Below, piece after piece: positions 1-43,845 of a stretch of 64,000 nt of DNA. A model generated the notes under the pieces. It saw nothing but the letters and a program-made list of their open reading frames with translations. It ran no database searches and had not been told where the DNA came from. Location: NCBI RefSeq assembly GCF_036588685.1, contig NC_086379.1:3968001-4032000 (forward strand), read 5' to 3'. Both the position numbers and the translations under genes were made by a program. Source of the DNA: Mytilus trossulus (Eukaryota). Numbering within the stretch: position 1 is the stretch's first letter; every line of letters begins with the position of its first letter.

Positions 1-3000
1 CGATGTCTTCTTTGAACACTGTCAAGTTTGCGATGTAACCAGTGCATGTTAAAATTATCCCATACATTCGTATCACTATGACATCCTTCGACGTGGTCTG
101 GTAAAATCGTGTTGAGTTTGGCACCAGCCTATTTTTACAATACCACTTCGGTTTGTGAGGACTTTGCATTGATAGAAACTTTGCAGATAATGTAACAGTT
201 GTATCCATTGTAATAGTTTTGTCAACTAGAACTGGTGGACCTAGATGAAAAATAAAACTTTACTAGTATTCTTTTTATTCAAATTGATTTGATCAGTTCT
301 TATGTTTAGTGTTTGTATTGAAATGGGAATCTAATCAGAATTTTACATGCACCCCATAATAATTCCGATTTAAGCAGAACCACAAATCTTTTTTTTTTTT
401 ATTTTGGACTTGAGATTCTATCTTGAACTGAAGTAAATGGTACGCGTTTACATGAACTAACATTCATTTAAACAGCTGAGGAATTCAAATTATTATACCT
501 TTTACGATTACACTAGTAGAACTGTTTAGACGGTATAGCTGTTGAGAGTCTTGGTTCCATGCTCCACAAATGTATTCACCGTTGTCCTCATAATTACAAG
601 AATCGATTGACAAAAAGGAAATATTTCCTGTAATATTTCCTGAGAGAGATCGTATGTGTGTACCATGAAATATGTGCTCCCAAGGAGAAAATCTAAATTC
701 TGACAAGTCACCGCTGAATCGGCATGATAAAATGACTGAGTAAGTGTTGTTGCAGAAAACCATATCCATTGTTTCGAGAATTGGAGCTCCTGAAATATGG
801 TTTTTAGTGATATTACCTGTAGCATAGTGAACATACACGTTCAATAATCCTCACATTGCAGTGAGTTTTCAGATCTAAAGAATCTTTGTAAAATTGAGAC
901 TTGAAAATCCTATGATGACCAGGTTATACGAAAATCCAAGATTCGTCCAATTGCAGTTCTTATTCTTACGATCAATGACGATATCACTACTAATTTGATT
1001 TTAGTAGTTTTGATCATAACGTCATTTGAAACCTCTGACCAATGACTTAATCAGTCATGTTCAGTGTTTCTGTCAACTCTCAGACTTATTCATTGCAGTA
1101 AAGTGAGCAGTGTTCAGACAAAATAACTTGCAATCAATTCAGTATTGTTTAGTTGTTTATCAAATAATTTAGTACAAGTCCATACCATTTACTAGAAAGT
1201 TTTGAATACATACTAAACAGATCGCAATTTATTACAATCGAATTGTCTGAACGGTCCTGATTTGATAGTATCAAATAAATCTGAAAATTAACCGAAATAC
1301 TAAAAATTAACTAAATAGTTTATTTAATGCAGTTTTAAAAGAGATGTTCCGATCAAAATAAACGTTTCACTTATAAAAAAAATGGGTTTCTAGCTATATT
1401 TAATAGGATTTTCCAGTCGGTATCTTTGTTTACCTAAGTTTATCTATACTTTGTGAATGAAATGTAAGGTTAATAATAAGGAAAGATTAGTTCATTGTTA
1501 CATTGCAGTGTAAACGATGAAAGAGATGAAATTAAATTTGCTATGTTTATTTGAACAGGTATATTTAAGCTCGTTTTAAACACATATCAGTTCAAATTCG
1601 TACAAGTGCAAAAGGGGACTAATATTTAAGCATTGTATAACTAATGGTTAGACAGACATATAAAAATAAGAATAACCAAAATAAAGACATCTTTTAAAGA
1701 TGGAGGAGAAGCAGTGGCAAATTTGTACAAAGTAGTAAAGTGGACGAAACGTATTAACGATTATGTATATATATATCCCTTCATTTATTCTTATATGCAT
1801 TCATATACAATGTATAAAAGATCAATATAAATCTTACTGCTAATACAAAAATTATCAATTGTATACTTACTTATTATATGTAGTTTAATCGACGTTGAGC
1901 TGGTAATGACACTTGATGATTTACATGTACAGAATGTTCCGTTATCTGAAGAATTCACTCTTTTTGAAAGTTTAGCAACGTATGTACCATTATAACTCCT
2001 GCTTGTTATTACAAATTCATTAAGACAACTCAAATGCAATTCGAGTACATGAACTCTGGAAGTACTTTTACATGTCAATTCAACAACACTACCAGCAAAT
2101 AATGGAAAGTCTTTATCAGATGTTATAACAGGACCAATGATATCTGCAAACGGAGATCAAACTTATACAGTCAAAAGAATCAAAATATTTGCATTTTATA
2201 TAGTTGACATTGATTCGTTTACACAAGTGAAAATGAGGCTCGGTTGAGAACAAAACCTTACGACAAAATAGACGATTGTGCTTCCCAATTGTGACCTTTA
2301 CACTTCTGTAAAGCAACATTCCAGCAGCACCGGCATATGGAGTATATATCTCCCGGTTGTTACGAACTTCCAGGTCTTGCATTTCCTATCTTTATTTTCA
2401 TGATAGATGATAGCTGTTCTCATTTGTAATCACAATCCCATTTTTATTATCTTGAAAATTTCCTATACTTATCACCGGGTTTGTACTTAAATTAGCATAG
2501 TGTGTTTTTTGTTGTTCTGCTACACAACTGTCCCTGTTAAAGAAGAGATTTAAGCGCTAATTTTGTTATGTACTTATTGATTATCCACAGTCAGAATGTA
2601 ATTCTGTATACGTAGTTGTAACATATGAACAATTTCTGAATACCCTTCAACAGCACTAGGGCAATGTCGGATTTTGACGGAGTTCGTGTATTTCAACCTG
2701 TATTTTTGAAGACTTTTTTAATTCATTTTTATTTCTTACAATGACGTGTCAGATTTTATTTGAGTTATGAATTTTAATATCCCCTATTCAAACGGTTTCA
2801 TTTTTTGTCATGCATTGTCCCTTAACATATGTATGAGCTTTGCTTATTGTTGAAAACCGTGTAGTGCCCTACACATTTTTGTTCTCTGGTCTCTTATTGA
2901 TTTTTGCTTTGCTACATATTCATCATTCATACGTACCAACTACAGTCACAAAATGACAATCTGATAGTGTACCAACGATCTTGAAATCCATAGAACATTT

Positions 3001-5452
3001 AAACTGTAGGACTCCACTAGTTAACTCTGCATCATATTGTAATACAAAACTTCTGCCATCTGACAGACACTGACACACAACATTCTGGCACATTGACGAA
3101 TCTAGGCTTGAGAGGCAACCATTTGCGTTTTTATATATTCTTGTATAAAGCTGATTGTTTACATGAAAATAAATTGACGAATCTTTGGAGTCTGTATTCG
3201 AGGTACAAAACAATAGTATCTTTTGTTGGATTTGGACATATTTAGGTCCAGTGACAGTAACTTTTATTTGTTCTTTTAAACCTAAAATAAGATTGATTAT
3301 GTTTATGTCGTACGCTATATTAATTGTGGATTGTTTATTTGAGTAGTGCGTATTGTTATGAAAAATGTCCAAGTAATAAAAGTCTCATAATAGTTAACTG
3401 CTAGTACTGACATCAGAATCGGACTTCTCTTGAACTGAATTTTAATGTGCGTATTGTTATGCCTTTACTTTTCTACATTAGCTAGATGTATCGGCGGTGG
3501 GGGTGGGGTTGGGTTGGGGTTTGAAATATCATAAACATGTTTAACCCCTCCACAATTTCCCGCCTGTTCCAAGTCAGTACCTTCTGGCCTTTGTTAGTCT
3601 TGTATTATTTTGATTTTTTTTCGTATGTACAATTTAGAGTTTAGTATGGTGTTCATTATCACTGAACTAGTATATATTTGTTTAGGGGCCAACAGAAGGA
3701 CACCCCCGGGTGCGGGAATTTCTCGCTACATTAAAGACCTGTTGGTGACCTTTTGCTGTTGTTTTTTTCTATGGTCGGGTTGTTATCTTTGACACATTTA
3801 TTGATAAAAATATAGGTTTTAACCATCGAATATAAAACATAAAACACCCTTTCTCTATTGCTTTTATTTTGGTTTGGGTTGTGAATATTTCTATCTTTAA
3901 ATAATTATCTACCAATCATGTGCAATTTCGACATTTTTCACTAGATTGCTCGATGAAAAGTAGTCAATAGTATCTAAACAGCGAAAAAGGAAAATCTTGA
4001 AACCAAAATTTCAAAATGGATGATTTCAAACTTTTTAACTCTGTATTAAAATAAAATCTTTAGTTTATTTAATTCAGGCTTAACTTGACACATAATCATA
4101 CCCTAAACTTGTAAAATATATACAATACGTATTGAAATTGTTGCTTACGTCATAAAATAGTATTAATATGCACTTATGAGAAGTAAACTTATACCTATAC
4201 GTTTCGGCACTGCTACATTCACACTAACTTTATCAAGTGTAAATCCATGGTAGCAGCTCCATGTATCATTTAAAGGAAGGTTATTAAGGGCTCGATTCAC
4301 AACATATACTGTTTCACCGGATGTTATGTCTTGTGTTATACTGTTCATGTGCTCACTTGCGTGGCACTGTGTCGTTGTGTTTGGGACCGGGCAGTAGGCT
4401 ACCTCTTCACCAGATGGATTACAAAATACGACAGGTAAGTATAAATCATCTGTTTTACACGCTATTCTTAGCTGATCCTTGTATAAACTCCAGCTTATGC
4501 ACACATTTCCATGGATTTGGCAAGTATCTGTTTAAAAGAAATATCACATTAGTCTTGAAAAAAAACAAGAAACCTTGTAGTATGTGTTTAATGAAAGCTA
4601 AAACAAAGTACACGTTATTCTGACTCCGAGTCAGATGCTTTAGTTTAACCAAATTCCGTTGTTTTATGGTCGAGAGATTATACTCAAGATCATCTACACA
4701 CGATGTATATAAGATGCCGAAAGATAATTTGTTGGATATATTAAACTGTGTTTACGAGTAGTTTGTCTTTTTCATTTTTAGCAATGGCGTTGTCAGTTTA
4801 ATTAGTTTCGATTTTTGAGTTTGACCTTCCCTATGGTATCTTTCGTCCCTCTTTTTGAACTTTTTACGACGAAATGATTTGATTGGCGTAAATTCAGTTT
4901 TGTACCGCTCCATATTGATCCATATTCAACGCTAAATAAAAAGATAAAGACAGCAGGAATCAACCTATCAACATGGCAATAAACGTTGTTTAAGTTTAAA
5001 ACATTGCTAACATCATACTTTAAAAGCTTTAGGAATATCAAAATAGACGATAAAGAACGCAGATTATTATGTGAATGCTTCATGATCTACAAGAGTAGCA
5101 TGCCATGAACTAGTTGTACAAACACACGATAAACGAATGTGAACCAATAAGTACAAAACGATAAACAGTTTCTAAACCACATTTATGGCCTTTTTGTCTT
5201 CTTGAGTTCAGCTTCACTAATTTTGTAGACGAAATGCATGACTGCCAATCAAAATTTTATTTCTACAACCTATTATGAGTTTATCAAATGAAGATACAAC
5301 TTCTGAAGATTAAGAATTCATTGTTCTGTAGTATTGTTAATATTGATAGTATAATCTCAAAGGATAAACCCCTAGCTTTTTTTAATGTTTTACAGCCAAA
5401 TTTTTCACTTACATTCAAGCAGAATAAATGTATATAATATATAAATATCCAT
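1..5452 (-). CDS. Gene A: multi-exon Ig-like-domain cell-surface protein (signal peptide, D1-D5); 3' part runs off the window start
   Basis: Exons 5413-5452 (MDIYILYTFILLE), 4195-4527, 2937-3281, 1871-2143, 499-789 and <1-240 all have AG/GT boundaries, phase-1 junctions and a continuous frame. Exon sizes 40/345/273/291 equal those of gene B. D4 contains the Ig motif DNGEYIC. Confidence 0.85.
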
Positions 5453-7011: not shown

Positions 7012-7019
7012 ATATATAC

Positions 7020-23100: not shown

Positions 23101-24793
23101 AATATTTGCCAGAAGAGATAAGTTCATGCATGACTATGGTCACATGAAATGAAATTCGTTAGCAAGAATATGTTTGTATTGCAGAAAATGCTCCTAATGT
23201 TATCTAATATAATATAAGGACGTCTCAAAGCGACATCTTTTTCACTTTTACATCCATGCATTTGTTTTCGTATTGGTTATGCACACAACTTAATATAACT
23301 TTTCGAGGGAATTATGCATGTGATGCTTGATAAAAGCATTTCTTCTCCTGCAATATATATTTAAATTGTTTCATTTTTTTTTTAGATTTTAAAGATAATG
23401 TTATCAAACTAGCAGTTGGGTTTGCAATTGTAATATTCTTTGTGGCATTGATATGTTTTTGTGTACCATATAGGAATCCAGGTTCAGTATATTATATCTT
23501 AAAAGTGCCACATCGTTGCATAACTTGGCTTGGTGAAATTTAATGATCTTAACGTCTTGTTAAATAATTTTCTTCCTCACTTAAACTAACAAGGCCTCAT
23601 ATTTTTTTGCAACATTATAGCTCTGCAAATGTGGTATATCTGATAGAATGAAATTCAAAACAGTGTGGCTGTGGCTATTGATTGACAGATTAAATTCATC
23701 CATTGACTGGGACAATTTACGTGCACGTTTGTCTGTAACGACCACTGTTCACGATGTACCTACGATAGACATTTAAACTGTGGGGTCACCAAAGGTTTCT
23801 TAACGCCTTTAATTATAAAATAATTCGAAAAATTAATTAGGAATAATCTTTATGTTTTGATTTTATATAATTGATATAAATCAAAACATCGTTTTATTTT
23901 GATAAATTTTTCGAATTATTTTATTTAGGGGTTGAGAACCTTTGGTGATACCATAGTTTAAGAGTCTTTTAAAAGTGCATAGTGAGCATTTGGCGTTACA
24001 TACAAACGTTCACCTAAATTGTCCTAGTCAATGAATGAATTTAATGAGTCAATCAATGGCCACAGCCACATTGAATTTCATTCTATAATAAACGAAATGT
24101 ATATGTATACCTCACATATTCAAATAATAAAGTCTGTTCTTATGACTTGGCCAGTACGTCATATTAAAACGGTTTACTTAATTATTTAAACATAGCATGT
24201 ATACATATCATGTATTATATCAGGTAAACAAAAATTGCAGAGCCATACATATTTTTTTCATATTTAAGGGATTGAGATACAACACTGACTTATCTAAAAG
24301 AAACAAAACTTTGTTTTACGAAAGTAATTAAAGAGAGAGTATATACGAAGGGGCAATCCCAATTCATATGTCAAATAAAACAGACAATTACAACATAGAA
24401 AAATAGAACTAACGAAAGGATAAAAATTAGGATAAAAATTCTAGAAACATATTTCAATTCTACGCAAGAGGAATAATGATAAAATAAACTAAAAGGAAGT
24501 AAACCGTTTATGGAAAGGAATACTTAAATTGATAATTAATGAAGTTGAAATAAGCTAATTGACAAACCGTTACATTTTTCTTATCATTTTGTCAATAAAT
24601 CATTACTTGACGTGTATAATTCTAAATACAGCAAAGATAATGTGGTAATCGAAGCTTTGAAATACATTATATTCTACATGCCCAATGACAATTTAAATAT
24701 TTTTTTATTTGTCTTGTATATCATGTAAATATTCATTTTTTATACATGTTGTATTTCACATTAAATACATTTATTCTTGTAGAAGACATATAA
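17198..24793 (+). CDS. Gene C: divergent short paralog (signal peptide, D1, D2, S/T-rich stalk, TM, short tail), ~352 aa
   Basis: Exons 17198-17261 (MEIVARIFFLLVLGISRLNIF), 17676-17987, 19264-19623, 20047-20196 (STIQTSTKETTTEH), 21545-21610, 23386-23481 (LAVGFAIVIFFVALICFCV) and a tentative last exon 24783-24793; all phase 1 with canonical sites. Cys spacing of D1 (CxxW...AxC...ETV...WxCxHG) and D2 (CTS...CxC...CxMxF) matches genes A and B. The last exon is uncertain, and an N-gap lies in intron 3. Confidence 0.75.
19671..19823. other. Assembly gap (153 N)
   Basis: Run of N inside intron 3 of gene C. Confidence 1.
23643..24086. mobile_element. Almost fully palindromic MITE (~444 bp)
   Basis: ATAGAATGAAATTCAA...GTGGCTGTGGC is mirrored by GCCACAGCCAC...TTGAATTTCATTCTAT; the arms match imperfectly for ~200 bp. 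Confidence 0.85.
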
Positions 24794-26179: not shown

Positions 26180-29100
26180 TTATTCTAATTCAAGATAATG
26201 ACCGACATCTTCGGGGTACTCTTCTGTTTCATCACTCTTAACACTTGTCTCAGTATTGTTGGAAGCAGTTGGAACTAAGTAATCATCACCAATTTCTTCA
26301 TAGGGAGAGGTGAGGTCGTAAATATTCACATTGTTGATGTTTTCAGGTGCAGCCAAATATCTGAAATATATGACTTCTATTTTATGAAATATTTTTGATA
26401 TTGAATAGCAATAAATGATTTTTATCAAGCAAAAAAAAATGTAATATTGCAATTTTATGTACGGCAAGATATTTTCATTTAAATATATTGTATATACATA
26501 TTATAATAAGACTTTACAATAGCGTTACATTTGTAAATATTTATATGTTAATAATATACAATAGTTTTCGATTCAGGAATATACATAGCAATAAATGAAA
26601 AATGCTTTTTTCTTCCGTTGTTTTTTCTCATTTCAAATATTTCAAAATCAATATTGAAACATCTTTCCAATTTTTTCTCTGCAAGGATACCAACCAAAAA
26701 AGTCAAATGCTAAACCTGACATATAGAACAATGTCATTAACAATAATTACGGTACCACTTTTACTGTATAAGTTTAGCATTGTTGGCAACAATTCCTGTC
26801 ATTAAAGCTCGAGACCAAACTATTTAAAAAAAAGTTCACTTATTTAAAAGTGAGGAGCTGATAAAAACCAACTTGAAAAGTGTGTTGCTAAAGACTAATC
26901 ATTAATGATCAAAATGTAAATTTCAATGATAAAAAGTTTTCGAATTCATACCGTTTTTGACAGATCGTACCTCAAATTACGTCATAAACGTTTACAATTT
27001 TTAGAGCGTCATTTGTGATTATTTTGTACATGAAACGCGTTAAGTCGCGTACACATTCTAAATTCTTGTATCGTCTATGAAGAGTTTATTTGCAACCACT
27101 GGGTCGAAGCCACTGTTAGTTAGGTTTGATCCCCGATTATATCATTAGGCCAGTAGTCAGCATTTCTGTGTTGACATGAGTTGTCATCGATAAGGTCATA
27201 ACTATGAACTAACTGTATACACATTTTGGATTTTATCGAAGTACTTATGATTGTATTCTCCAGGAGTAGATTACCAGAGCAGAATTCGGCAAACTCCTGT
27301 TTAGTGTTGAAATCAGAAATGATCTGGAACTACGTATTTAATTGTTTTTTTAAACACTATTATGTTGATCCGAGGGTCACGTATGAGTCTTTTTAAAACA
27401 AAACGCGTGTCTGATATACACATGTTTTATCCTGATATTTTTGATGATAGATATAGGAAGATGTGGTGTGAGTGCCAATGAGACAACTCTCCATCCAAAT
27501 AACAATTTAAAAAGTAAACCATTATAGGTTAAAGTACGGCCTTCAACACGGAAATTCAACATATTGATATAAAAAAAGAAGATGTGGCATGATGGCCAAT
27601 GAGACAACTCTCCACACGAGACCAAATGACACCGAAATTAACAACTATAAATTACCGTAATGCTTTTAACAATGACCAAAGCCCATACAGAATAGTCAGA
27701 TATAAAATGACAAATGTAAAACAATTCAAACGTGAAAACTAACGGTTTAATGTATGAAAAAGAAATTAACACAAAACAAAACAACAAATAACAACCACTG
27801 CATCACAGGCTCCTGACTTGGGACGGGCACATGTATTAAGAAATTGCGGGGTTAATCATGTTAGCGGGATCCCAACCCTTCCCTAACCTTAGATAGCGGA
27901 TGCTACAGTACAACATAAGAACGAGCAAAAAAAAAAGGCTTAACTTATCAAATGATACCAAAAGAAATAAACAAAAACACAGGGTGAACGTGGCCCAGCT
28001 TCTTGTATATTCCAAAAACAAAAAGACACTTGGTATTGATCTGAGAGTATTCGCAGTTACTAACAGCTAGTTCAAAGCCGCTAACAACTCATATAAAAAA
28101 ATCATGCATCTAAGACTCAATGAACAGGTTATATTCTATGTCATTAATATATCTCTACAAAACGTGTCAACCAAAGGGATGATAAACTGTTCAGCTTCAA
28201 ATATAAGATTTAAATAAAGATGTTATTGTACTCTGTTAAGGATCAATCAACATTATACGTATAAATGGATTTTTCTGACACTTAACATCACATTTACTAT
28301 GAAGTTAAAGCTTTTAAAATTTTAATTACACTCTTAAAACATCTTGTATTTCTACCAACCTTGGACAGAAGCTTGTAAATGATGAAGCAAGTATATAGAA
28401 GAATTTTGTAATTTTCACCCTGTTTTTCTTCATATTACTTATAAATGGACTAGCTAGCATTACATACAGTCTGCAGTTAAAACTTGTAAAACATGCATAA
28501 GATTCATAAACCATCATGGAGTTTTAATAAAATTTGACTGTAGCTTCTTACAATCAACCGATAGTATATCAAGAAGAAAATCTGTTAAATGATTTTTCAC
28601 CATTTTTGAGTCTGTGACTAACAGCACAAGTAGATTAGACACTGGGTTCCGCGGAACCCTTACGAATTTTGTTCATGCACTAATTTATAACAAATACCAC
28701 TTAGTCTAGATAGTCTTGAACAAGTTTAACTAGCAATAAATGGTTTGGTTTCAGTAATTTTACTTCTACACAAAGCTTCAATTTGATTTATCTAGACATA
28801 TCTCGTAAAAATAAAACAAATAACAACAAATGCAAATAACACTTATTGACTTATTGCGTCAGAAGGGCTTTTCTTGATTTAGATTTACCTGGTTACGCCC
28901 CAACCTACACTTGTGAAAGTCAGCAATGTATATACACATAAAACATAAAAAGCCGAGGAACCAACACAGAACTAAAAACGATAGCCAAGTAGGTATTGTC
29001 AAGTTCCTTGAAGGAGTTTTAATCCTAGCCTGTCAGTATCTAGCACCAACTACTGATCTGTTGATAATATTGAGGACCTACTGTATATCAAAAGTGTTGT

Positions 29101-32100
29101 AAATGTACAAGTTAGAAATATCAAGGATGTTCATGAAGTATATTTGTCGGGAATGATAACAAACATTCACCCATACAACAAATACAACGAAATACTAGAA
29201 AGGTGTGTCAACTATCCATATACAATTTGTAGACAACTTTTAATCAATACATTACACAAATATAATATATAACTCTACTCACATAGCTCTAGAGGCAGTC
29301 AGTACCTGTGAATCTATAAGAAATTTAATTATCATCAATGATGATGACGTATTTAGCTATCAATTAATTTGACCATTTCGTCGTCAGTTTAATAAAAAAA
29401 AAATCATATTTTCTTTGTTCTTTAACACTTTGAATTGTTTTACATTTTTTTTGGGGTCCTTTTATAGCTGACTATGTGGTATGGGATTAGCCCATTGTTG
29501 AAGGCCGTTGGGTGATATGTAGTTGTTAATTTCTGTTTCATTTTTGTCTCTTGTGGATAGTTGTCTCTTCAGCAATCATAACACATCTCATTTTTTTATA
29601 TGTGATTTTGTAAAAATAAGATATATTAAAAATGTTATTGTTGTTTGTTGTTGATGTATATTTTATCTGTAAAGAGTTCCTTAAAATTCAGCTACGAATA
29701 TCTAAATAAAATCTTTAATGATTTAATAAAAGGTAATTATGATCCATTTCAAAAGGTAGGTATAAATATATTTAAAACATAACAGTTACTGTGCATGCAT
29801 TTACATGTACAGAAAGATGGGTGGATAAATCAATTGCGCAAATATAGTTTTAAACAATTACTTGTAATAGTTCAGCTTTTAAATTTCAGCAAAGCAACCA
29901 AAGACTGAATATTGGCATTTGCAGCTTATATTACAACAACTGACAAAATCAATGCATAGGAAATTACAGTAAAATTTGGAATGACTCCAACATGAGATAA
30001 AAAAATCACTTTCTGAATTGAAAAATCTTTATTCTGTAATCCTTTTTTAAGTTGCTAGCTTTTAAATTGGTGTTATGAATTGACACATTTACTTGTTATA
30101 ATACTTACTTCGTCTGTGGCGGCAGATCAAAGCAGTTGATAAAATAACTGTTATCAAAAGTAAAATCGTTCCAAATGATAGCCAGCTGAACAGTCTTAAG
30201 TTAAAAACATTAGAGCCTACTAAAAATAAATATCACATTAAATTAATGATCAGGTTTTTTTTAAAGTTTAAGAACCGATCTATATCGATAAGTTTGTTTT
30301 TGGTGTTTAACAACCATTCTGTCTCCCAAAAAAAGACCACGATGAAAGAAAGCCTCCATTTTCTTTAGTTGTATATTTAAGGTATATAAAATTGATAAAT
30401 AATTGCTTCATTATAACAACTTGCAACCGACCATTCTTTCGCATGTTTCATTCTATTATCCAATCAAGAGGCATTGACGTAGATATCAAATTTTTTTTTG
30501 ATTTTTTAAGAGACGTAGAGATTTTGTTTCGTGTTATTCTTGCTTTTTATTTTAGCGTTATAACATGTATAATGAGTGCCTTTTACATTTCAATTTTCTG
30601 TGTTGTTTCTACTGGTTTCAGTCATCCGTTTGTTGGTCCATATAAACAAACTGCATATCTATTATTGTTATAGTGGTTTTTTTTTATAAATACTGTTCCA
30701 AACATTAACAATTATTTTCATAAAGTCTTCTTTATTCAGATTATTCCAAATTTTTCTAAATGTCACGAAGAATACATAATAAACATGTCTAAGTTGCCTT
30801 TAAATAATTGTTTATTAGTTTGTTTTGTCAACCCTGTGTGTTTATAGCATTTCTGATAGACTAGTTCATTTTTAAAACAATTGTTAATGGCATGTAGCTG
30901 TTTACTACATTAAGTTTGTTTCTTAACGGATTTTTGTTTCTTAAAAGAAAGGAATTGACATGTCTTTTTGTTTCTTCAATGCGCATGTTGTGACTTTGCA
31001 TGACATAAATTCTTTTCTGATACATTGTGATATGTACAGGATATTGTATTCTTTAAGACAAAGATGAGACCAAACGAAATACCACAATACATTGATGGTT
31101 AATATTTAATTTTTGTGGTATATAGACGCAAGAAGATCTGATATAAGAGCGAAGGAGACAACTCTCCATCCGAGTAAAATTTTGTAAAAAGTCAAAAATT
31201 ATAGGTGAAATCGTTATTAAATGTACCAGGCTTATAATTCAATACGTCAGACGCGCGTTTTGTCTACAGAAACTCAACGATGACGCTCAGATCAAAATAG
31301 TTATAAAGCCAAACAAGTTCAAAGTTGAAGAGCATTGAGAGCCCAAAATTCCCAAAAAATATACCAAATACGGCTAAGATAATTTATGCCAACGATAGGA
31401 AAATCCAGAGTATTTCGAAAAAATCATATATGTTATATGGTATGATACTAAACCCCTCACGGGAAGTAGTGTGCCTGATATTCATAAGATGAAGACATAC
31501 TCTTTCAATCAGTTTAATTGTAGTCTGGATCTGGCATGTCAGTTAACTGCTAGTAGTCTGATGTTATTTATGTATTATTGTCATTTTGTTTATTTTCTTT
31601 GGTTACATCTTCTGGCATCAGAATCAGACTTCTCTTGAACTGAATTTTAATGTGCGTATTGTTATGCGTTTACTTTTCTGCAATGGCTAGATGTAAGGGG
31701 GAGAGTTGAGATCTCATTAACATGTTCAACCCCGCTGTAATTTTGTACCTGTCCCAAGTCAGGATCCTCTGGTCTTTAGTAGTCTGGATTATTTTTAATT
31801 CTAGTTGCTTGTGTACAATTTGAAGTTTAGTATTGCGTTCTTTATCACTGAACTAATATATATATTTGTTTAGGGGCCAGCTGAAGGACGCCTCCAGGAG
31901 CGGGAATGTTTTGCTGCCTTGAAGACCTGTTGGTGACTTTCTGATGTTGTCTGCTGTTTGGTCGGGTTGTTGTTTCTTTGACACATTCCCCATTTCCATT
32001 CTCAATTTTTTTCTGAAAACAAGCAATTTATAAAAATAACAAATTGAATAATTTTCGGAATTTTAAATCCTCAATGCTCTTCAACTTCATACTTGTTTGG

Positions 32101-35100
32101 CTTTATAAATATTTTGATATGAGCGTCACTGATGAGTCTTATGTAGACGAAACGCGCGTCTGGCGTACTGAATTATAATCCTGGTACCTTTGATAACTAT
32201 TTACACCACTGGGTCGATGCCACTGCTGGTGGACGTTTCGTCATCGAGGGTATCACCAGCCCAGTAGTCAGCACTTCGGGGTTGACATGAATATCAATTA
32301 TGTGGTCATTTTTATAAATTTCCTGAATATAAAACTTTGAATTTTCGAAAAACTAAGGATTTTCTTATCCCAGGAATAGATTACATTAGCCGTAATTGGC
32401 ACCACTTTTCGGAATTTTAGATCCTCCATGCTCTTCAACTTCGTACTTGTTTGGCTTTATAAATATTTTGATATGAGCGTCACTGATGAGTCTTATGTAG
32501 ACGAAACGCGCGTCTGGCGTACTAAATTATAATCCTGGTACCTTTGATAACTATCAACACTGAAGTGCTGATTACTGTACGGACTACAATACCGAACCTT
32601 TGAATTTTAATCACGAGGAATTACATTGAAAGAGTGTTATAGATCCTTAATAAGTAGGAAAAGTAAAGTAATACCATTATCATGATTGTTGAATTCAAAT
32701 TCCATTTTTGTCGTTCCATACTCATTATCAATCAAAAGATAGCACTTAAATATAGCGTAGTCGTTACTGACTGTGAGATTTGCGATGTAACCATTGTGGG
32801 TTAAAATTTTCCCATACATTCTTATCACTAAAACATCTTTCGACATATTTTGGAAATATTGTGTTGAGTTTGGTAGCAGCATTGTTTTGTAAAACCATCT
32901 CGGGTTATATGGTCTCTTTACTGATAAAAACTTGACAGATAATGTCACAGCTTTGTCAATCGTTATAATTTTGTCAATTTCCACAGGAGGACCTGGATGA
33001 AAAACAAAATGATAAAATGAAATTTCATTAAAAATTCAGAATTGAAAAAATCTCATTACCAGGGAAAACATTATATACTTATTTTTATAAAAATAAGGCT
33101 GTTTGTTTTCTTGTTTGAATTGTTTTACATAGTCATTTCGGGGCCTTTTATAGCTGACTATGCGGTATGGGATTTGGTCATTGTTGTAGGCCATACTGTG
33201 GTGTAAAGTTGCTAATTTATGTGTCGTTTTGGTCTCTTTTGAATAGTTGTCTCATTGGCAATCATACCACATCTTCTTTTTAATGTTTATTTGTTCACGT
33301 ACATTTTACGTGCTGTATTTAGAATTGATCCCTGCTTCAATATGACAAAATTAGTATGCACGATCATCCTGACGCTTCGGCATTTGCCATTGGATGTGAA
33401 GCAACCAACATTCAATTAATCATAATGCACTCTTGAGGTTTTTAAAGCATTTGTTTAACCATATGTTTGTTTTTCAATACTATATTGATTTTTGTCATTT
33501 ATAATATTTATCTCAGCATAATAATCAATTAAGATATAAACCTCTTTGAACAAAATACTGATCAAGATGATTTTAAATTGAATATGCAACCGAATAAAAA
33601 TGCATTGCTATGAAACTGCAAGATAAACATAAAAATAATAAGATTATAAACGAACTACTAAATTAGAATTGACTAAGTATAATCTACATCTGTCATAACT
33701 ATATATATTTACAGTTACAAATGTGTGTTTTTTTATTTTGTTTTTGTTGTAGTTGTTGAAAACACCGGCTCATTATTACACCAAAAAGTGCACGCAGATT
33801 GCATAATTTATTTTTTTAAGTATTGAGTTGAATCAAAATTCTAAGTTTTGAAACGTCAGTCATTTAACTAATTATTGATTAACGAATCAATTTTGGAGGT
33901 GATGCTTACTAATTGATACATTTAGTTGTACATTAAAAACTATTAATTGTTGTTTTTAAAATATTTTAAATCATTGTTATTCACGGCATTTAACAGATTA
34001 TTAGGCCACACCAATTTAATTTCTTGTTTTACGGATTTTTGGACTTCAAAAAATGGGGCGAGCGAGCGATTTGAAAATTTTAATAAAAAAATATTTAATT
34101 TGCACATTTTTGAGGCGAAGCTTAAAAAGTAAAGGCGAGCGATTATAATTTTTTTTTTGTAAATATAAAATAGGAGGTTTTGACTATATTAAAACTTGAT
34201 TTATCACTTGTACCTTGACATTTCTTTAATTTATGAAATATTTTTTCCCTGTTCAACAAGAAATAATTGAATAATTAAATCTGGTCTATGTATGTGTGAC
34301 TGACAATGAGACAATTCTCCATCCAAGTCATAATTAGGTTCAGAACAACCCCTTAATGTAATGAATATCCCTTTTATGAGGGGTCATATAAGTTATAATA
34401 TATTTTTTTTGTAAAAACACTTCAAGTACAAAAGGGCTAATATTTTCCCAAAGAAATATAATATTTGGTATTAAATGGTCAAAACATATCCAAGAATTTT
34501 GTAATATTCCTGGACTTTAACCTTGTTAACACCTTTACTTTAACAGTTTAATATTATTCAAAATAAAAAATGTAAGTGGACCCATCCCTCTTTTAGAAAA
34601 GTGGTTTAAAATATGATGTATTTCTCCTCAATTTGAGTAAAACATTCTAAGTTGTCAAAGATTTTGTATAGTAGCACTATACAAGTCCTTAGTATTTCTA
34701 TTTTCTTTTCTACATCAGTAGATATGGTAAAATGACCCCTTCAGGGCCCTTGTCTGAGGGAGGGTTGTTCCAAACCTGATAATAACAAACATAAGTCAAA
34801 GTACGGCCTTTTACACAGAGCTTTGATCCAGACCAACCAGCAACCTATAAGGCACCACAACTTAGTATTGTACACAATTCGAACAGGAAAACCAACGATC
34901 GAATTTATATTTCCAAACGGGAAAACACCAATGAACCTGCCACATCAACAAACGATAACGGCTGAACAATAGGTCCCTTAATAAACCTGAACAGGTGCAC
35001 AAACCTGCAGCGGACATGACCGTCACCATACTTTATAATTGCAGTTGAAGGCAAATCCTTCAGGAGTTCTTTGTACTTTATTTCCACGAACATTTTGTTA

Positions 35101-38100
35101 TAGGGAATATAAGTTAGGGGGAAAGAAACCAACGTTTTGTTCTGTACTGGTATTTCCGGTTATATATTTACTTGTCCTGCTTCCATTTATATCGGAGCAC
35201 TCCCAGGTGAAATAAATTAATTGGTTTCATGCTGAAACAAATATTCTCGCAGATATTTACAGTGTTGTGGGGTACTGATAGGTTTAAAATCGTTATATAA
35301 AGGCTAGACTGTGATTTATAAACAAATGTTGAGATCTTTTTATAATAATTACAAAAAAAACGGTGCGGGAAATGGACATGATTTCATTTCCGGATGCGGG
35401 AAGCGGGAAAATAATAAAAATAAAAAAAATCTGTTTTGAAAAAAATAGATGCAGGCCGGTCCGTCGAACAAGGAATCAAATTGGTGTGGCCTTAGGACAT
35501 TTAATTAATGATGCCTCAGCGTAGTTAATAAGATGACACATGTACATAAATAGATTAGCTACCGTTAACGGTCACACTAGTAAAACTTTTTTGATGTAAC
35601 ATCTGTTGAGAGTCTTTGTTCCATGCTTCACAGATGTATTCACCATTGTCTTCATAATTACAAGAATCAATTGATAGAAATGAAATATTCCCCGTTACAT
35701 TTCCTGCCTCAGATCTTATAAATGTTCCATGAAATCTGTGCTCAAACGGTGAGAATCCAAATTCTGACATTTCGCCACTGATTGTGCATGATATAATGAC
35801 GGAATCTGTGTTATTGCAGAATATCTTATCATTGATATCAAGAATCGGTGCTCCTGGAATTTAAAATTTTCAAAGGTTTCAAAATTAAAGTAAAATAAAA
35901 AGACCCGTTCTGTATGTAACCTTCATAAGTAGTTATTTCTTTATGGGAAATATATTATCGTTTACCGTACAATTTGCAAAGTAAACCAAATTTTTGCCTA
36001 CTATAGCAATTTGTATATGCCGTAATCTCCTAGGGTTATCGTCAATTGTCAACTGTTTTTAATAGTGTTTGTACAAAAAATCTGTCAGTGCACCCGAAAA
36101 AGGCAGTACTACTTGTGGTGTTTGAATTCAATGTGAACCAATTGTTTTATTTTACATTGTTGTCCATTTTTTGCTTAAACCATCGAATCACTTTTTTTCT
36201 TTCCTATTTGACCTGTTTACCTTAATGTTTTTTGTTGATTTTCCTTGCAGCGCATACGCAACACTATTTGTCTACTCTATTCGACATATTTCTAAGTTCA
36301 TGGGCTACAGGATTTTGGATAATTTCACGCTTTGTACACCAATATCAAAATGATATTGTACGATCAATTCGATATCTTCTTATATTTGATCAATCACCAA
36401 TTTATTAGCACAATGTTACCCATTAACAGCGTACGATTTTATAAAACACTCATCTAGAATACAGCAGACCCTAACTTAGATATTTATCATTACTTGATGC
36501 TATAAACGAGACATACATGTATGCACAAATATACGTAAATGTCAAATCTGGATTAAAAAATATTGACAATGATATTATTTAAACATGAAGTAAAAACAAG
36601 TAATAAAGCTGAATAAGGTCACAATAAAGCAACACAAGCTATCTCATAACTCTAAATTATCATATTAGTTATGTCAAACAATTGGAAGGTATAGCTTGCT
36701 AACTGTTAACCCAGGTTTAATCTACAATTTTCTACATAAAGAAATGTCTTCACTAAGTCAGGAATGCGACAGTTGTTTTCCATTCGTTTGATTTGTTTCA
36801 GCTTTTGAATTTGCCAGTTGATAGGGAATTTCCGATTTGAATTTTCCTTTGAAATCGGTGTAATTTCTATTTTACTTTTCACTTACATCTATGTAGTGAT
36901 AAAAAAAAACATGTTTATGCAATTATATAGATGTGGTGTAGTCAATCATATAGTACTTACTATTTACATGCAGTTTGATTGAAGATGACTTTGTAATCAC
37001 GCCTGAGGCTTTACATGAACACTTTGTTCCATTGTCTAACGACGTCACCATTTTGGAAAATTTAGCGACGTATGTATTATTTTCACGCTCACTTGTTTGA
37101 ACAATTCTGTCAAGACATTGCATGCGAATATGGAATAGGGAATTCGTGGAAATTGTTCTGCACGTTATTGCAACAACACTGCCGGCAGATAGCGGCAATT
37201 CTTTATCGAATAAAATGAATGGACCGTTTATATCTGCAACAAGAAGTGAAATAAAATGGAGAAATACGTTTCCACAGATAATCATACAAATATAAATATA
37301 ATTGAAAATGTCGTTTGTTTCCTTGATATTTGTTAATAGTTTTGTCTTTCTTTAAAATTTGAATCTCACTGACGCAGTTGATCACTGTGTCAGGTTCACA
37401 TTTCGTTATTACAAATATAAAGTCTTGTTTTTTTTTTTGTAATGCTTACAAAAGAATGGTGAGAATGAACTTTGTTTTATACGCACCAACTACTGATACA
37501 AAAAGGCAATCAGATAATGAGCCAAACATCTTGAAATCCATAGAACATCGAAATGCTAAGTCTCCTGTATCTAATTCTGAAAAATACTGCAACGTGAAAC
37601 TTCTTCCATCTGCCAAACACTGGCACATATGCCTTTTACAATCTGATGCCTCCAGGCTTGAGAAACAGCCGCTTGCATTTTTACTTATCTTTGTATAAAA
37701 CTGGTTGTTAACATAAAAATAAACCGCCGAAACAGTCGATTCTGTATTTGAGGTACACAAGAGAGAAATCGTTTGTTGCCTTTGGACAAATTTCGGTCCA
37801 CTTAAAGTTATTCTCGGCGATACGATAAACCCTGAAAAAGTAAGACCTCATTAGTTTAGTTTGTACAACTTGAACGATACACAATTGTAAATGATAATGA
37901 CTTGTTATTATTTCAAATATTGCACGACGGTTCCAACCAATCAAATCAATCAAGAAACAGCAATTTGAAGATAACCGTTAGTGAACTATCGAAACAACTA
38001 CTGACAGTATTCCCTCGGTCTAAATGGCAATATCAAAGAACAATGGAATATACAACATTATCATTTAAAACTGTTTACTCCGGTGAGGGGGGAGGGGTTG

Positions 38101-41100
38101 AACATTCAGACGTTTCTCTATTCCCGTCACATTATATAAAAGCCTGTTCAAAGTAAATGAAGTGTTTTGCCAGAAATCAGGCCGTTGAGTTTCTATTTGA
38201 ACTGTTTCATATTTTATTATTTCATAGCTTTTTTATGATGCCTTTATACTGTGGTGGCTTTGTTCGTTTTTGAAAGACACACTTTGATCTATAGTTGTAT
38301 CCATGTCATGTGCGCTTTATTATATTTCAAAAAGTAAAATCACAAAAAATACTGAACTTAGAGGAAAATCAATTCGGAAAGTCCATTACCACAAGGCAAA
38401 ATCAAATAACAAAACGCATTAAAAACGAATGGACAAGAACTGTCATATTTTGACTTGGTACAGGCATTTTCGAATGTAGAAAAATGTTGGATTAAACCTG
38501 GTTCTATAGCGCTAACCCTCTCACTTTAATGACAGTATTATCAAATTCCGTAATTGATATTTGCAACCTATCCTAATTTTTATACTATCCGTCAGTCATA
38601 TTTAATAATACGTCATGTATAAGGCTACGAGCCGTCAGTCAAAATATAACATCAACATTGTGAGATTTGAAAATTGTTATGAACATATAAAATTACTTAA
38701 AAGACTCTCTACATTGCATGAGATACATATATATTTTTGTGCAATTATACCTTTTGGCATTTCAACATCGACAGTGATATTTTCGAATCCATGAACACAC
38801 CTCCATAAACCATTCAAAAGATTAACATTTGGAGGTCTTTTAACGACAAATACTGTTTCACCAGATGACAAGTCTTGTGTAACGTTGTTCGTTTTTGGAT
38901 TAGAACACATTGAATTTGGATATGGCAGCAAGCAGTATGCTATTTCATAACCGGACGGACTAAATATCGTGACGCTCGACACTATTTTATCTGCTTTGCA
39001 CGTTAATCTAAATTGATCACTGTTTACAATCCATGTGATGCATATACTTCCGTAGATTTCGAAAACATCTGTTTAAAAAAAATCAAATAAGTCTAAAAAT
39101 AAACCTGAAACAAGTCTATAAATTTTCTATAAAAGCTATACAGTCATACATCATTGTTTCTATACACAATTTAAGTTGGAGTTTGGCCAGGAATTATGCA
39201 AAAAAAGGAAATATAGTGATATACAATGTGTAAACTTTTTCATGTATTTGTATTTAGAGATTTTGTGAAGATAGTACTGAATCATGGCGAGTCAAACGTT
39301 TCAAAACTGGAAAAAAATAATGATTAAAAAAAGCATTTTCAAAACATGTATTTTGCAGACCAAATAAAGAGGGATAAATTATTAGTTTCAGAACTATATT
39401 CTCTATGAATTCAAATGTTTGCATTTAATCACTTCCATATTTCAATAACATACTTTTATCAGCTCTGTTGCGTTTAGCATTGAGAAGATACTGTAACAGT
39501 GGACGATATTGAGAGTGAATCATTGAAATTGTTTAGTCAAAACTATGTTGAAGGTGACCTATAATTGCTAATGTTTGTGTCATTTTTGTCTTTTGTGGAT
39601 AGTTGTCTCTTTTGCAATAATACCACATCTTCTTTTTTACATTAAACCCTTTTTTCAAAACAAAAAAATACACACTGAGATTTAAAAACCTAAAACAACA
39701 CACTGAGATTTTAAAATTACACACTGAGATTAAAAAAACATGAAAAACACACACTGAGAAATTAAAATTACATACTGAGATTTTAAAAAGGCCACACTAA
39801 GATTAAATCAATTGAAAAACACACACTTAGAATTGTTTAAAATTACACACTGAGATTCACATTGAGATTATTATGCAAGTTACTAATGAATATTCATGAG
39901 ATGAATAATTCAACAGATTATTATCTTGGTTTCTCGAACTCTTGTCATTATAATAATGTGGTTCCTTCAACCAACATTCATAATAAAGGGCATTAAGGCC
40001 TAGTTTTGGCCCAAGAAAATGAATTGTTTGATAACTATTTCAAATTGGCACATAATGTTTAGAAATGTATAGGGTCAAGAAATATAAATGATAAACATTA
40101 TGATTTTTTCTGATGACGTCACAATTACGTCATGATATGTACTATTTTCATAAAAAAATATAAAAAAACCAACAGAATTTATGCAGTTTTCTGACTTTAT
40201 TTCCGTTGTGGAAACATCCTGCGCAACCGAGAAACCACACTAATTTGACAAAAGCTTTATTATAACTATTGGCATCATCTCACCAAATATAAAGTTGTTT
40301 CTTGGGTGCGCACATACTTTCTCAGTCTAAAAAATACTTAACATTTGATGAAAAAATAAGGAAAATCACGAAATTTAACAAAATATGCAAATTAGGTTAT
40401 GATTTGTTGTCATGGTAACTTGTTCGATGTCAAATTTGTCTTTTTTTTTTCTAAGTACCTAATGCCTTAGACAAGTTTTCAGTAATAGAAGGATAGTTAT
40501 GATAACTTTGTAATTTGTAGTAATTTTTGGGCCAAATAAGGGCCTTATTGCCCCTACTCCTTTCATACCACATCTTCTTATGTCTATATATTAAGACCTT
40601 TTTTTGGTAACTCATATTCACAAGATTGTTGTCTATATAATTCAGACTAATATAATTGCTAACAGCGTATTGGGATTGTTTGCTCAAAACTTTTTAAGCA
40701 TAGGTCCTTTTTCAAACGTTTTTCAATGTTTTCTATTTTTGTTACATTTATATGCTATAATCGGCACTTGGGTAAAAATGTCTTTGCATTGTTTTTCTTT
40801 TTGTAGATTGTTCCAACATTTCTTATAATTTTTCAAGTATTTTACCATGATGTGATCATATGTGAGACAAATAATACATGTCTGTGGTTATATTTTGTAA
40901 TGAGAGTAAGGTATTTTTCATGTTCTATTGGTCCCTTACGTCGTATTCCTAATGTATTTTATAAAATATTTGGCGCCAGATTTAGGGAGTTACGAGTTCT
41001 GTCCCCTAGTTGTTTTCAGCTTGTAATAGATTAAGATTACGTATGCTAATTAGATATATGCGCATTAAAAATGCACACAACTCTCAGTGTGTAATTGTAA

Positions 41101-43845: not shown

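What the first reader, a model, noticed from the sequence alone, without database searches (positions are those of the whole stretch)
1..43845. Cluster of three diverged Ig-like receptors sharing an unusual Cys-rich D1-D2 head: candidate uncharacterised immune or allorecognition receptor family
Seen: genes A, B and C share an N-terminal two-domain head. D1 reads C-x2-W...L/F-x3-C...P...A-x-C-x8-C...ETV...W-x-C-x-HG. D2 reads CTS...F-x2-NN...C...C...CxC...CxMxF. Each domain is one phase-1 exon. A and B are long five-domain forms; C is a short, oppositely oriented two-domain form. I do not recognise the family. Established: tandem clusters of diverged Ig-like type-I receptors with Tyr-based tails are typical of recognition systems such as Hydractinia Alr genes and vertebrate Siglec/LILR clusters. 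Inference: this may be an analogous lineage-specific system in a bivalve.
Basis: partly seen in the sequence, partly recalled or inferred. Interest (0 to 1): 0.85.

Follow-up and report, generated by a model that had tools for sequence, protein, structure and literature searches.

The report
Mussel-specific expanded Ig receptor gene cluster
The window holds three real, related mussel (Mytilus trossulus) genes for cell-surface immunoglobulin-type receptors from a large, undescribed, apparently Mytilus-only family, but nothing yet shows an immune or self-recognition role.

Summary
Genes A (-), B (-) and C (+) share two N-terminal Cys-rich domains with the stated motifs. Every domain is one symmetric phase-1 exon with canonical splice sites. 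A and B have five Ig-like domains, one transmembrane segment and a tyrosine-rich tail; A finishes just outside the window. The N gap begins 47 nt after C's D2 splice donor, past the stop that closes the D2 frame. It breaks no exon but hides C's 3' part, so "short form" is unproven.

AlphaFold2 and Foldseek show that D1 and D2 are divergent V-set Ig domains that Pfam does not detect. The genome is Mytilus trossulus. It carries at least 56 D1 and 51 D2 exons in about 26 clusters. Public data hold 320 D1 clusters, and all 14 named proteins checked are Mytilus "uncharacterized" proteins.

D1-D2 is not a fixed unit. Only 14 of 56 D1 exons have a D2 downstream, and most D1 proteins are D1 plus 2-4 membrane helices.

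A-versus-B dN/dS is 0.19-0.39, so no positive selection is evident. An immune role is plausible but untested; allorecognition is unsupported.

The parts
4201..4527 (-). Gene A, exon D1 (V-set-like Ig domain), phase 1-1, 327 nt
   Evidence: Motifs found; splice sites; 43% identical to B-D1.
2937..3281 (-). Gene A, exon D2 (V-set-like Ig domain), phase 1-1, 345 nt
   Evidence: 60% identical to B-D2.
1871..2143 (-). Gene A, exon D3 (Ig-like), phase 1-1, 273 nt
   Evidence: Pfam Ig_2 E 0.003.
499..789 (-). Gene A, exon D4 (Ig-like, I-set/Ig_3 type), phase 1-1, 291 nt
   Evidence: Pfam Ig_3 E 5e-4.
1..240 (-). Gene A, exon D5, cut by the window start. It continues about 80 nt to C7:3967921. A's TM exon (C7:3966544-3966654) and tail exon (C7:3964569-3964730) lie outside the window.
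   Evidence: for the acceptor; tblastn on the flanking genome; translations.
17198..17261 (+). Gene C, candidate signal-peptide exon (21 aa with a hydrophobic core, donor TTG|GTAAGT, phase 1). Unverified.
17676..17987 (+). Gene C, exon D1, phase 1-1, 312 nt
   Evidence: E 3e-11 to independent Mytilus D1 proteins.
19264..19623 (+). Gene C, exon D2, phase 1-1, 360 nt. The frame stops at 19629-19631 if it is not spliced.
19671..19823 (.). Assembly gap (153 N). It begins 47 nt after C's D2 donor, in intron or 3' sequence. It was not filled and not searched.
23386..23481 (+). Gene C, candidate transmembrane exon (96 nt, phase 1-1, strong polypyrimidine acceptor, 19-residue hydrophobic helix). Unverified and not conserved in the paralogs checked.
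38751..39068 (-). Gene B, exon D1 (V-set Ig fold), phase 1-1, 318 nt
   Evidence: AF2 pLDDT 87; Foldseek V-set hits.
37487..37831 (-). Gene B, exon D2 (V-set Ig fold), phase 1-1, 345 nt
   Evidence: AF2 pLDDT 94.6; Foldseek V-set hits including TIGIT.
36961..37233 (-). Gene B, exon D3 (Ig-like), phase 1-1, 273 nt
   Evidence: 56% identical to A-D3.
35563..35853 (-). Gene B, exon D4 (Ig-like), phase 1-1, 291 nt
   Evidence: Pfam ig/Ig_3/I-set E 2e-4.
32675..32992 (-). Gene B, exon D5 (Ig-like), phase 1-1, 318 nt
   Evidence: weak titin Ig match, E 0.015.
30093..30219 (-). Gene B, transmembrane exon. It runs 30219..30109 (111 nt, phase 1-1, donor GAA|GTAAGT) or, alternatively, ends at 30093 (phase 2). 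It encodes a hydrophobic helix followed by basic residues.
   Evidence: homologous TM exons in genes A and D.
26180..26376 (-). Gene B, last exon, encoding the cytoplasmic tail. The acceptor is at 26376 (phase 1) or 26360 (phase 2); the stop codon is at 26180-26182. Tyr motifs: NIYD, S-P-Y-E-E-I, Y-L-V-P, E-Y-P-E and terminal Y-L-E-L.
   Evidence: conserved in A and D tails and in Mytilus proteins P0074, P0107 and P0079.

Best explanation
What it is. The window carries three paralogous genes, and a fourth, D, lies 11 kb beyond the window end. They belong to a large IgSF receptor family that is built by exon shuffling and, as far as sampled, is restricted to Mytilus.

Architecture. A and B encode type-I membrane proteins. 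Two membrane-distal divergent V-set Ig domains (D1, D2) each carry extra conserved cysteines beyond the canonical B-F pair. Three further Ig-like domains (D3-D5), one transmembrane helix and an acidic tail of about 55 residues follow. The tail has conserved tyrosines, including S-P-Y-E-x-I. That motif fits both the ITIM consensus and the YEEI-type Src-SH2 motif. The tail ends in Y-L-E-L. C has the same D1-D2 exons in a very diverged form; its membrane and tail part is unresolved.

How it probably works (inferred, not shown). The V-set head binds an extracellular ligand. Tail tyrosines are then phosphorylated by a Src-family kinase and recruit SH2 proteins, so the protein acts as a signalling recognition receptor. 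The most probable setting is innate immune or cell-cell recognition.

How the family grows (shown). New members arise by tandem duplication and by re-use of single-domain phase-1 exons in different architectures.
For: Gene structure and conservation:
- Canonical phase 1-1 exons.
- A and B are colinear over D1-D5, TM and tail, with dN/dS 0.19-0.39 at dS about 0.8-1.0. Both have therefore been kept as coding genes.

Fold:
- AF2 gives pLDDT 87 for D1 and 94.6 for D2, with 9-10 strands including C' and C''.
- Foldseek against PDB returns V-set domains only: nanobodies/VH, CD28, CTLA-4, MPZL1 and TIGIT, at probability 1.00 and TM 0.55-0.71.
- The D2 profile weakly hits Fc-gamma-R and beta-2-microglobulin Ig domains.
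- D3 and D4 give weak Pfam Ig hits; D5 weakly hits titin Ig.

Family size and range:
- 56 D1 and 51 D2 exon hits in the 1.30-Gb genome, in about 26 clusters.
- 27 D4-like exons, at least 16 of them just downstream of a D2.
- 320 clusters at 50% identity in 1.84 billion proteins.
- All 14 named proteins sampled come from Mytilus trossulus, californianus, coruscus, edulis or galloprovincialis. All are annotated 'uncharacterized' or 'Ig-like domain-containing'.

Modularity:
- D1 plus 2-4 TM helices (e.g. P0001).
- D1-D3-D4-D5-TM-tail (P0074).
- D1-D2-D3-TM-tail (P0107).
- D1 x3 (P0048).

Tail: the motifs are conserved in A, B, D and in P0074, P0107 and P0079.

Transcription of the wider family: Logan contigs of about 1-1.6 kb encode whole 280-aa D1-plus-TM proteins. 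The genomic gene of that type is multi-exon.
Against: - No transcript or protein evidence exists for A, B or C themselves. The only database proteins close to B-D2 and A-D2 read on into intron, so they are genomic fragments.
- The signal-peptide exons of A and B were not found convincingly.
- The TM-to-tail junction of B has two in-frame solutions.
- Pfam does not detect D1 or D2, and the classical strand-C Trp is missing.
- Ligand, cell type and signalling are all inferred.
- Restriction to Mytilus rests on 14 named proteins out of 320 clusters.
Confidence: 0.8

Rival explanations
1. Innate immune receptors. A and B are ITIM-type, inhibitory or otherwise regulatory, receptors on hemocytes or epithelia. 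They recognise microbial or host ligands, as KIR, LILR and Siglec clusters do. Shorter forms such as C would act as partners or decoys.
For: - The head is V-set.
- S-x-Y-x-x-I is present in the tails of A, B and D.
- The family is large, clustered and lineage-specific.
- D1, the membrane-distal domain, is the most diverged between A and B: 43% identity, highest dN at 0.40.
- Another window of this scan reported an ITIM-ITSM Ig receptor family in the same genome. That is a lead only.
Against: - There are no expression data.
- dN/dS stays below 0.4 in all domains.
- In other family members the position two residues before the Tyr varies, so the conserved core is Y-E-E-I rather than a strict ITIM.
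- No link to any immune pathway was tested.
Confidence: 0.35
2. Allorecognition or self-marker system. Polymorphic D1-D2 heads would bind in trans between individuals or cells, as Hydractinia Alr1 and Alr2 do. This could matter for resistance to transmissible neoplasia in Mytilus.
For: - General resemblance to the Alr family: many clustered IgSF genes whose V-set domains escape sequence-based detection, with ITAM/ITIM-like tails (PMC9546547).
- M. trossulus is the species of origin of mussel transmissible cancers (my own knowledge).
Against: - Mussels are solitary, with no fusion or rejection biology.
- Mixing hemocytes of different mussels gave no sign of an allo-response (PMC12956514).
- The family is scattered over at least 10 contigs rather than one complex.
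- Polymorphism could not be measured.
- The A/B paralog comparison shows purifying selection.
Confidence: 0.06
3. Cell-adhesion or developmental/neuronal IgSF molecules with no immune role. Multi-Ig ectodomains and tyrosine-based tails also occur in adhesion and guidance receptors.
For: - The five-Ig type-I architecture.
- I-set-like D4 and D5.
- Purifying selection.
Against: - Adhesion IgSF genes are usually conserved across phyla and low in copy number. This family is large and modular, and it was detected only in Mytilus.
- Its head domains have no recognisable orthologs.
Confidence: 0.2
4. Some or all of the three genes are non-functional copies: unexpressed duplicates or fragments. This applies above all to C, whose 3' part is missing.
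For: - Neighbouring gene D has a frameshifted D1 and lacks D2-D5, so decay does occur in this cluster.
- No transcripts were found for A, B or C.
- The leaders of A and B are unresolved.
- C's downstream exons are not identified.
Against: - All 12 domain exons in the window are open, keep every conserved Cys and have canonical splice sites.
- A and B are under purifying selection despite dS of about 1.
Confidence: 0.12

Closest known systems
Hydractinia Alr gene family of the allorecognition complex (Huene et al. 2022, PMC9546547)
   Same: - Dozens of clustered invertebrate IgSF type-I genes.
- The membrane-distal V-set domain lacks the diagnostic sequence motifs and is recognised only by structure prediction.
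- It has extra invariant cysteines and tails with ITIM/ITAM-like tyrosine motifs.
- Pseudogenes sit among the functional copies.
   Different: - No sequence homology was shown.
- Alr genes sit in one complex, whereas this family lies in about 26 clusters on many contigs.
- Alr1 and Alr2 are proven polymorphic homophilic self-markers in a colonial animal. Mussels are solitary, and no allo-response of hemocytes was seen (PMC12956514).
- Here two V-set domains sit in tandem and are followed by three Ig domains.
Vertebrate clustered inhibitory/activating IgSF receptors (KIR, LILR, Siglec, SIRP, CD300; my own knowledge)
   Same: - Tandem clusters of rapidly duplicating type-I Ig receptors.
- One Ig domain per phase-1 exon.
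- Tails with the (S/I/V/L)xYxx(I/V/L) motif.
- Long and short forms occur side by side.
   Different: - There is no orthology.
- The head domains are V-set with additional disulfides.
- The conserved tail core is Y-E-E-I plus a C-terminal Y-[IL]-E-[LM].
- No charged TM residue or adaptor pairing was seen.
- The function is untested.
V-set co-receptor domains CD28/CTLA-4, TIGIT, MPZL1 and antibody VH/nanobody domains (best structural matches)
   Same: The V-set beta-sandwich topology with C' and C'' strands and the B-F disulfide.
   Different: - Sequence identity is only 8-22%.
- TM-scores are 0.5-0.7.
- The strand-C Trp is missing.
- Extra Cys pairs are present: a C-x8-C hairpin in D1 and four extra Cys in the C'-E region of D2.
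Biomphalaria FREPs, diversified molluscan IgSF immune proteins (PMC7588048)
   Same: A mollusc-lineage expanded IgSF gene family with one or two N-terminal IgSF domains.
   Different: - FREPs are secreted lectins with a C-terminal fibrinogen domain and a proven anti-parasite role.
- The genes here are membrane receptors with tyrosine tails and no fibrinogen domain.
- No relationship between the two was tested.

Membership tests
Immunoglobulin superfamily, V-set domain (D1 and D2) | Two-sheet beta-sandwich with strands A-G plus C' and C'' | tested here: met
   The AF2 models (pLDDT 87 and 94.6) have 10 and 9 strands. The top Foldseek PDB hits are all V-set domains, at probability 1.00 and TM 0.55-0.71.
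Immunoglobulin superfamily, V-set domain (D1 and D2) | Conserved Cys pair linking strands B and F | tested here: met
   D1 Cys23 and Cys90 and D2 Cys25 and Cys95 are conserved at 90% or more across 30-31 paralogs. They fall in predicted strands 18-25/86-92 and 20-27/89-99. The pairing itself is inferred.
Immunoglobulin superfamily, V-set domain (D1 and D2) | Invariant Trp in strand C packing on the disulfide | tested here: not met
   Strand C of D1 (residues 32-35) has no Trp; the conserved Trp residues are at positions 12 (strand A') and 88 (two residues before the F-strand Cys). D2 has Phe or Tyr at that place.
Immunoglobulin superfamily, V-set domain (D1 and D2) | Match to Pfam V-set/ig models at the curated cut-off | tested here: not met
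   No Ig-clan hit for D1 or D2 reaches significance. The only one is Big_7 at E 0.16 for B-D2. The D1 profile has no PDB sequence match, and the D2 profile gives only E of about 0.03 to Fc-gamma-RIII.
ITIM-bearing inhibitory IgSF receptors (KIR/LILR/Siglec/PD-1 type) | Type-I topology: Ig ectodomain, one TM helix, cytoplasmic tail | tested here: met
   B has D1-D5, a TM exon and a tail exon in the window. A has the same, with its TM and tail just outside the window. The signal-peptide exons are unresolved.
ITIM-bearing inhibitory IgSF receptors (KIR/LILR/Siglec/PD-1 type) | (S/I/V/L)-x-Y-x-x-(I/V/L) motif in the tail | tested here: met
   The motif reads S-P-Y-E-E-I in B, S-P-Y-E-I-I in A and S-H-Y-E-D-I in D. 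In P0074 and P0079 the position two residues before the Tyr is H or P, so only Y-E-E-I is family-wide.
ITIM-bearing inhibitory IgSF receptors (KIR/LILR/Siglec/PD-1 type) | Phosphotyrosine-dependent recruitment of SHP-type phosphatases and an inhibitory effect | not testable with these tools
   This needs biochemistry.
ITIM-bearing inhibitory IgSF receptors (KIR/LILR/Siglec/PD-1 type) | Sequence homology to a vertebrate family | tested here: not met
   No significant PDB or Pfam sequence match. The nearest ESM-Atlas clusters are mollusc hypothetical proteins; PVRIG and PD-1 clusters score below 0.9.
Hydractinia-type allorecognition (Alr-like) system | All genes lie in one genomic complex | tested here: not met
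   D1 and D2 exons lie in about 26 clusters on contigs C2, C3, C6, C7, C8, C9, C13, C19 and C65.
Hydractinia-type allorecognition (Alr-like) system | Extreme allelic polymorphism of the distal domain | not testable with these tools
The only hints are genomic fragments of unknown species, 90% identical to B-D2 and 81% identical to A-D2.
Hydractinia-type allorecognition (Alr-like) system | Homophilic trans binding that controls fusion or rejection | not tested
   No complex prediction was run, because no binding claim is made. Published hemocyte-mixing assays in mussels showed no allo-response (PMC12956514).

The most novel reading that the evidence does not exclude
Mytilus evolved its own V-set receptor system of 50 to 100 genes by shuffling single-domain exons. 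The system would comprise long ITIM/YEEI-tail receptors such as A and B, short forms such as C, and D1-plus-multi-TM proteins with a CD47-like layout. These members would work together as a polymorphic self/non-self or 'marker-of-self' recognition system of hemocytes. That would bear on why mussels tolerate exchanged hemocytes and how they resist or permit transmissible neoplasia.
Probability: 0.08. Interest if true: 0.85.

Novelty: new variant of a known kind. Interest (0 to 1): 0.45.

Why it matters
Bivalves are known for large lineage-specific expansions of immune gene families, but their IgSF receptors are poorly described. This finding defines a concrete family that databases label only 'uncharacterized'. 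Its two V-set domain types are invisible to Pfam. It has at least 50 gene copies per genome, modular architectures and a conserved tyrosine-signalling tail.

The result supplies profiles (alignments A5 and A6) and exon models that others can use to annotate the family. With these they can ask whether it varies between individuals by presence/absence or alleles, and whether it signals like vertebrate ITIM receptors. That question is of interest because Mytilus trossulus is the source of a transmissible cancer and mussels exchange hemocytes.

As it stands this is a descriptive gene-family result, not a demonstrated recognition system.

Tried and rejected
No expression or polymorphism test was possible.

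2. Annotated protein of gene B. I searched with an alignment of P0074, P0107 and P0138 plus B's exons as separate rows. It returned only relatives of P0074. A search with B-D2 alone found three genomic-fragment ORFs that read into intron, not transcripts.

3. Spliced protein. 

4. Signal-peptide exons of A and B. Hydrophobic Met-start ORFs with phase-1 donors were listed and compared between A and B. The best pair is A 5182-5128 and B 43777-43708. It scores no better than unrelated pairs, and the DNA around it does not align convincingly. I rejected it as evidence.

5. C's 3' part. No family TM or tail exon lies on the + strand after the gap. Downstream regions of four C-like paralogs share no exon with C's candidate TM exon; the conserved pieces there are repeats.

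6. Positive selection. Whole-domain Nei-Gojobori dN/dS between A and B is 0.19-0.39. Loops are only slightly more variable than strands. Neither supports diversifying selection, although site-level tests were not possible.

7. CD47 kinship of the D1-plus-TM proteins. The ESM Atlas gives a CD47 cluster at only 0.84, below the 0.9 level. This is a lead only.

8. Rfam at gathering threshold found nothing in the window.

9. Literature. Four searches found no paper describing this family.
Full report
**1. What is in the sequence**

The window is AT-rich eukaryotic DNA (32% GC) with one N run at 19671-19823. It also found three with the D2 signature (CTS, F-x2-NN, C-x-M-x-F), paired as follows:
- A: 4166-4531 and 2926-3384, on the - strand.
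- B: 38680-39072 and 37449-37847, on the - strand.
- C: 17648-18040 and 19221-19628, on the + strand.

An all-against-all BLASTP of open segments showed that A and B are colinear over five successive segments:

| Domain | Identity | E-value |
|---|---|---|
| D1 | 43% | 9e-30 |
| D2 | 60% | 2e-51 |
| D3 | 56% | - |
| D4 | 71% | - |
| D5 | 64% | - |

C is far more diverged, at 22-26% identity to A. It is still significantly related: C-D2 versus A-D2 gives E 1e-5, and C-D1 versus independent Mytilus proteins gives E 3e-11.

**2. Exon models and the gap**

Every domain is bounded by a polypyrimidine-AG acceptor and a GT donor. Each exon length is a multiple of three, and the intron falls after the first base of a codon on both sides. 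Coordinates are listed under parts.

B continues with two more exons:
- A transmembrane exon starting at 30219: a hydrophobic helix followed by R-H-R-R.
- A last exon ending in a stop at 26180-26182.

Two in-frame donor/acceptor combinations are possible for that junction, and I could not decide between them.

Gene A runs off the window start. On the adjoining genome its D5 is completed, and homologous TM and tail exons follow at C7:3966544-3966654 and C7:3964569-3964730.

The gap was tested first, as asked. C's D2 frame closes with a stop at 19629-19631. Its GTAAGT donor starts at 19624 and the N run at 19671. The gap is therefore outside any exon and no reading frame crosses it. It does break the link between C's D2 and whatever follows. 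I did not try to fill it.

After the gap there is no family Ig, TM or tail exon on the + strand. There is only an unverified candidate TM exon at 23386-23481, with the right phase and a strong acceptor. So 'two-domain short form' is consistent with the assembled sequence but not proven. If the D2 donor is unused, C would be a secreted two-domain protein.

A plausible signal-peptide exon for C lies at 17198-17261. The leaders of A and B remain unresolved.

**3. What the domains are**

Pfam finds nothing for D1 or D2. It finds only sub-threshold Ig matches for D3 and D4. D5 weakly matches titin Ig domains.

I collected paralogous exons from the window's own genome and built alignments of 31 D1 and 30 D2 sequences. 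With these, AlphaFold2 gave confident models for B's D1 (pLDDT 87) and D2 (pLDDT 94.6), with 10 and 9 strands. Foldseek against the PDB returned V-set Ig domains throughout:
- For D1: nanobodies/VH, CD28, CTLA-4 and MPZL1.
- For D2: nanobodies and TIGIT.

The 'unusual Cys-rich head' is therefore two tandem V-set Ig domains.
- They keep the B-F cysteine pair.
- They lack the strand-C tryptophan.
- They carry extra conserved cysteines: a C-x8-C hairpin and an N-terminal C-L-x-W in D1, and four extra Cys between strands C' and E in D2.

**4. The family**

The genome is Mytilus trossulus. Protein P0001 is XP_063398898 of that species. It sits on a contig of 82,295,107 bases, the length of contig C9 here, and locus L005 encodes its D1. 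P0146 gives the same match for contig C2.

Counts in the genome (lower bounds):
- The D1 profile finds 56 exons and the D2 profile 51.
- These lie in about 26 clusters on nine contigs.
- D4-like exons number 27, and at least 16 lie just downstream of a D2 exon.

Counts in public data:
- In 1.84 billion representative proteins, the D1 profile finds 320 clusters at E of 0.001 or better, and 207 at 1e-10 or better.
- All 14 proteins that carry a name come from five Mytilus species. All are called 'uncharacterized' or 'Ig-like domain-containing'.
- The ESM Atlas places D1 nearest to mollusc 'hypothetical protein' clusters.
- Four literature searches found no description of the family.

The D1-D2 head is not a fixed unit. 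Only 14 of 56 D1 exons have a D2 exon within 12 kb downstream, and 147 of the 150 best D1 proteins lack D2. Architectures seen:
- Signal peptide, D1 and 2-4 TM helices, about 250-300 aa. This is the commonest type (e.g. P0001).
- D1-D3-D4-D5-TM-tail (P0074).
- D1-D2-D3-TM-tail (P0107).
- Three D1 domains in a row (P0048).

This is what exon shuffling of symmetric phase-1 domain exons would produce.

The cluster around the window has a fourth member, D, at C7:4043354-4055596. It has a frameshifted D1, no D2-D5, and an intact TM and tail. Decay therefore also happens here.

**5. Tail and likely mechanism**

The tails of A, B and D and of P0074, P0107 and P0079 share these elements:
- a membrane-proximal (I)Y-x-A-A-P;
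- N-[VI]-Y-[DE];
- a Y-E-[EID]-I core;
- a C-terminal [HQ]-Y-[IL]-E-[LM].

In A, B and D the core reads S-x-Y-x-x-I. That satisfies the ITIM pattern and resembles the Src-SH2 optimum pYEEI (my own knowledge).

The most likely working model is that a V-set head binds a ligand, a Src-type kinase phosphorylates the tail, and SH2 effectors are recruited. That model is inference. Nothing here shows the ligand, the cell type or the sign of the signal.

**6. Tests of the immune or allorecognition reading**

- Nei-Gojobori dN/dS between A and B is 0.39 (D1), 0.29 (D2), 0.36 (D3), 0.19 (D4), 0.34 (D5) and 0.25 (tail), at dS of about 0.8-1.0.
The contrast is modest, and all domains are under purifying selection.
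- Loops are only slightly more variable than strands.
- Polymorphism and expression could not be examined.
- The closest database sequences to B-D2 (90% identity) and A-D2 (81%) are genomic fragments of unknown Mytilus origin.
- A 2026 paper reports no sign of allorecognition when hemocytes of different mussels are mixed (PMC12956514).
- The nearest conceptual analogue is the Hydractinia Alr family: V-set domains unrecognisable by sequence, and ITIM/ITAM tails (PMC9546547). That family differs in lying in one complex and in its proven function.

**7. Verdict**

The family is genuinely uncharacterised and, as far as sampled, Mytilus-specific. It is a divergent branch of a well-known kind, namely expanded clustered IgSF receptors with tyrosine tails. 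Its immune or self-recognition role is a hypothesis without direct support.

Another agent of this scan described an ITIM-ITSM Ig receptor family of at least 57 genes in the same genome. I could not test whether it is the same family.

Noticed in passing
window 32123-32166 and 32477-32520 (+): There are two type-I hammerhead ribozyme motifs, each scoring 33 bits (E 7e-6), just under Rfam's gathering score of 34. They are exactly 354 nt apart, inside gene B's D5-TM intron and antisense to B. This looks like a retrozyme-type tandem.
   Followed up: partly
window 48773-50170 (-) and 55534-57162 (-): A 466-aa ORF matches the secretin/adhesion-type 7TM domain (7tm_2, E 1.5e-15). A 543-aa upstream ORF on the same strand has a sub-threshold somatomedin-B match. 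Together they are probably one GPCR gene. A retroelement fragment (RT_RNaseH, 52572-53201, +) lies between the two parts.
   Followed up: partly
P0001, P0027, P0122 and about 40 other proteins; e.g. locus L005:1501-1806: Most proteins that carry the D1 domain are not D1-D2 receptors. They are proteins of about 250-300 aa with a signal peptide, one D1 V-set domain, a short Cys-containing stalk and 2-4 transmembrane helices. That layout recalls CD47 (IgV plus a multi-pass membrane part). The ESM Atlas lists a CD47 cluster at only 0.84, so this is a lead, not a finding. Logan contigs of about 1-1.6 kb encode whole proteins of this type, so they are transcribed.
   Followed up: partly
outside the window: G000 C7:4043354-4055596 (-), loci L067 and L069: This is a fourth cluster member (gene D). 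Its D1 is split by a frameshift and no D2-D5 exons were found, but the TM exon and the tyrosine tail (S-H-Y-E-D-I ... Q-Y-L-E-L-E) are intact. It is a probable decaying copy or a truncated form.
   Followed up: partly
window 62684-63890: A 65-nt satellite is present in 18.6 copies with 86% matches.
   Followed up: no
window 7063-7356 and 6000-7500: A 146-nt unit is repeated twice at 99% identity. It contains a tRNA T-arm-like GGTTCGAATCC motif, so it is probably a tRNA-derived SINE. It lies within a locally duplicated stretch upstream of gene A.
   Followed up: no
L072 (C19:3524191-3534190) versus L073 (C9:78349973-78359972): The regions downstream of two C-like D2 exons on different contigs are 80-95% alike in all reading frames over several kb. 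This points to a recent segmental duplication of a family member between contigs.
   Followed up: no
   Followed up: no
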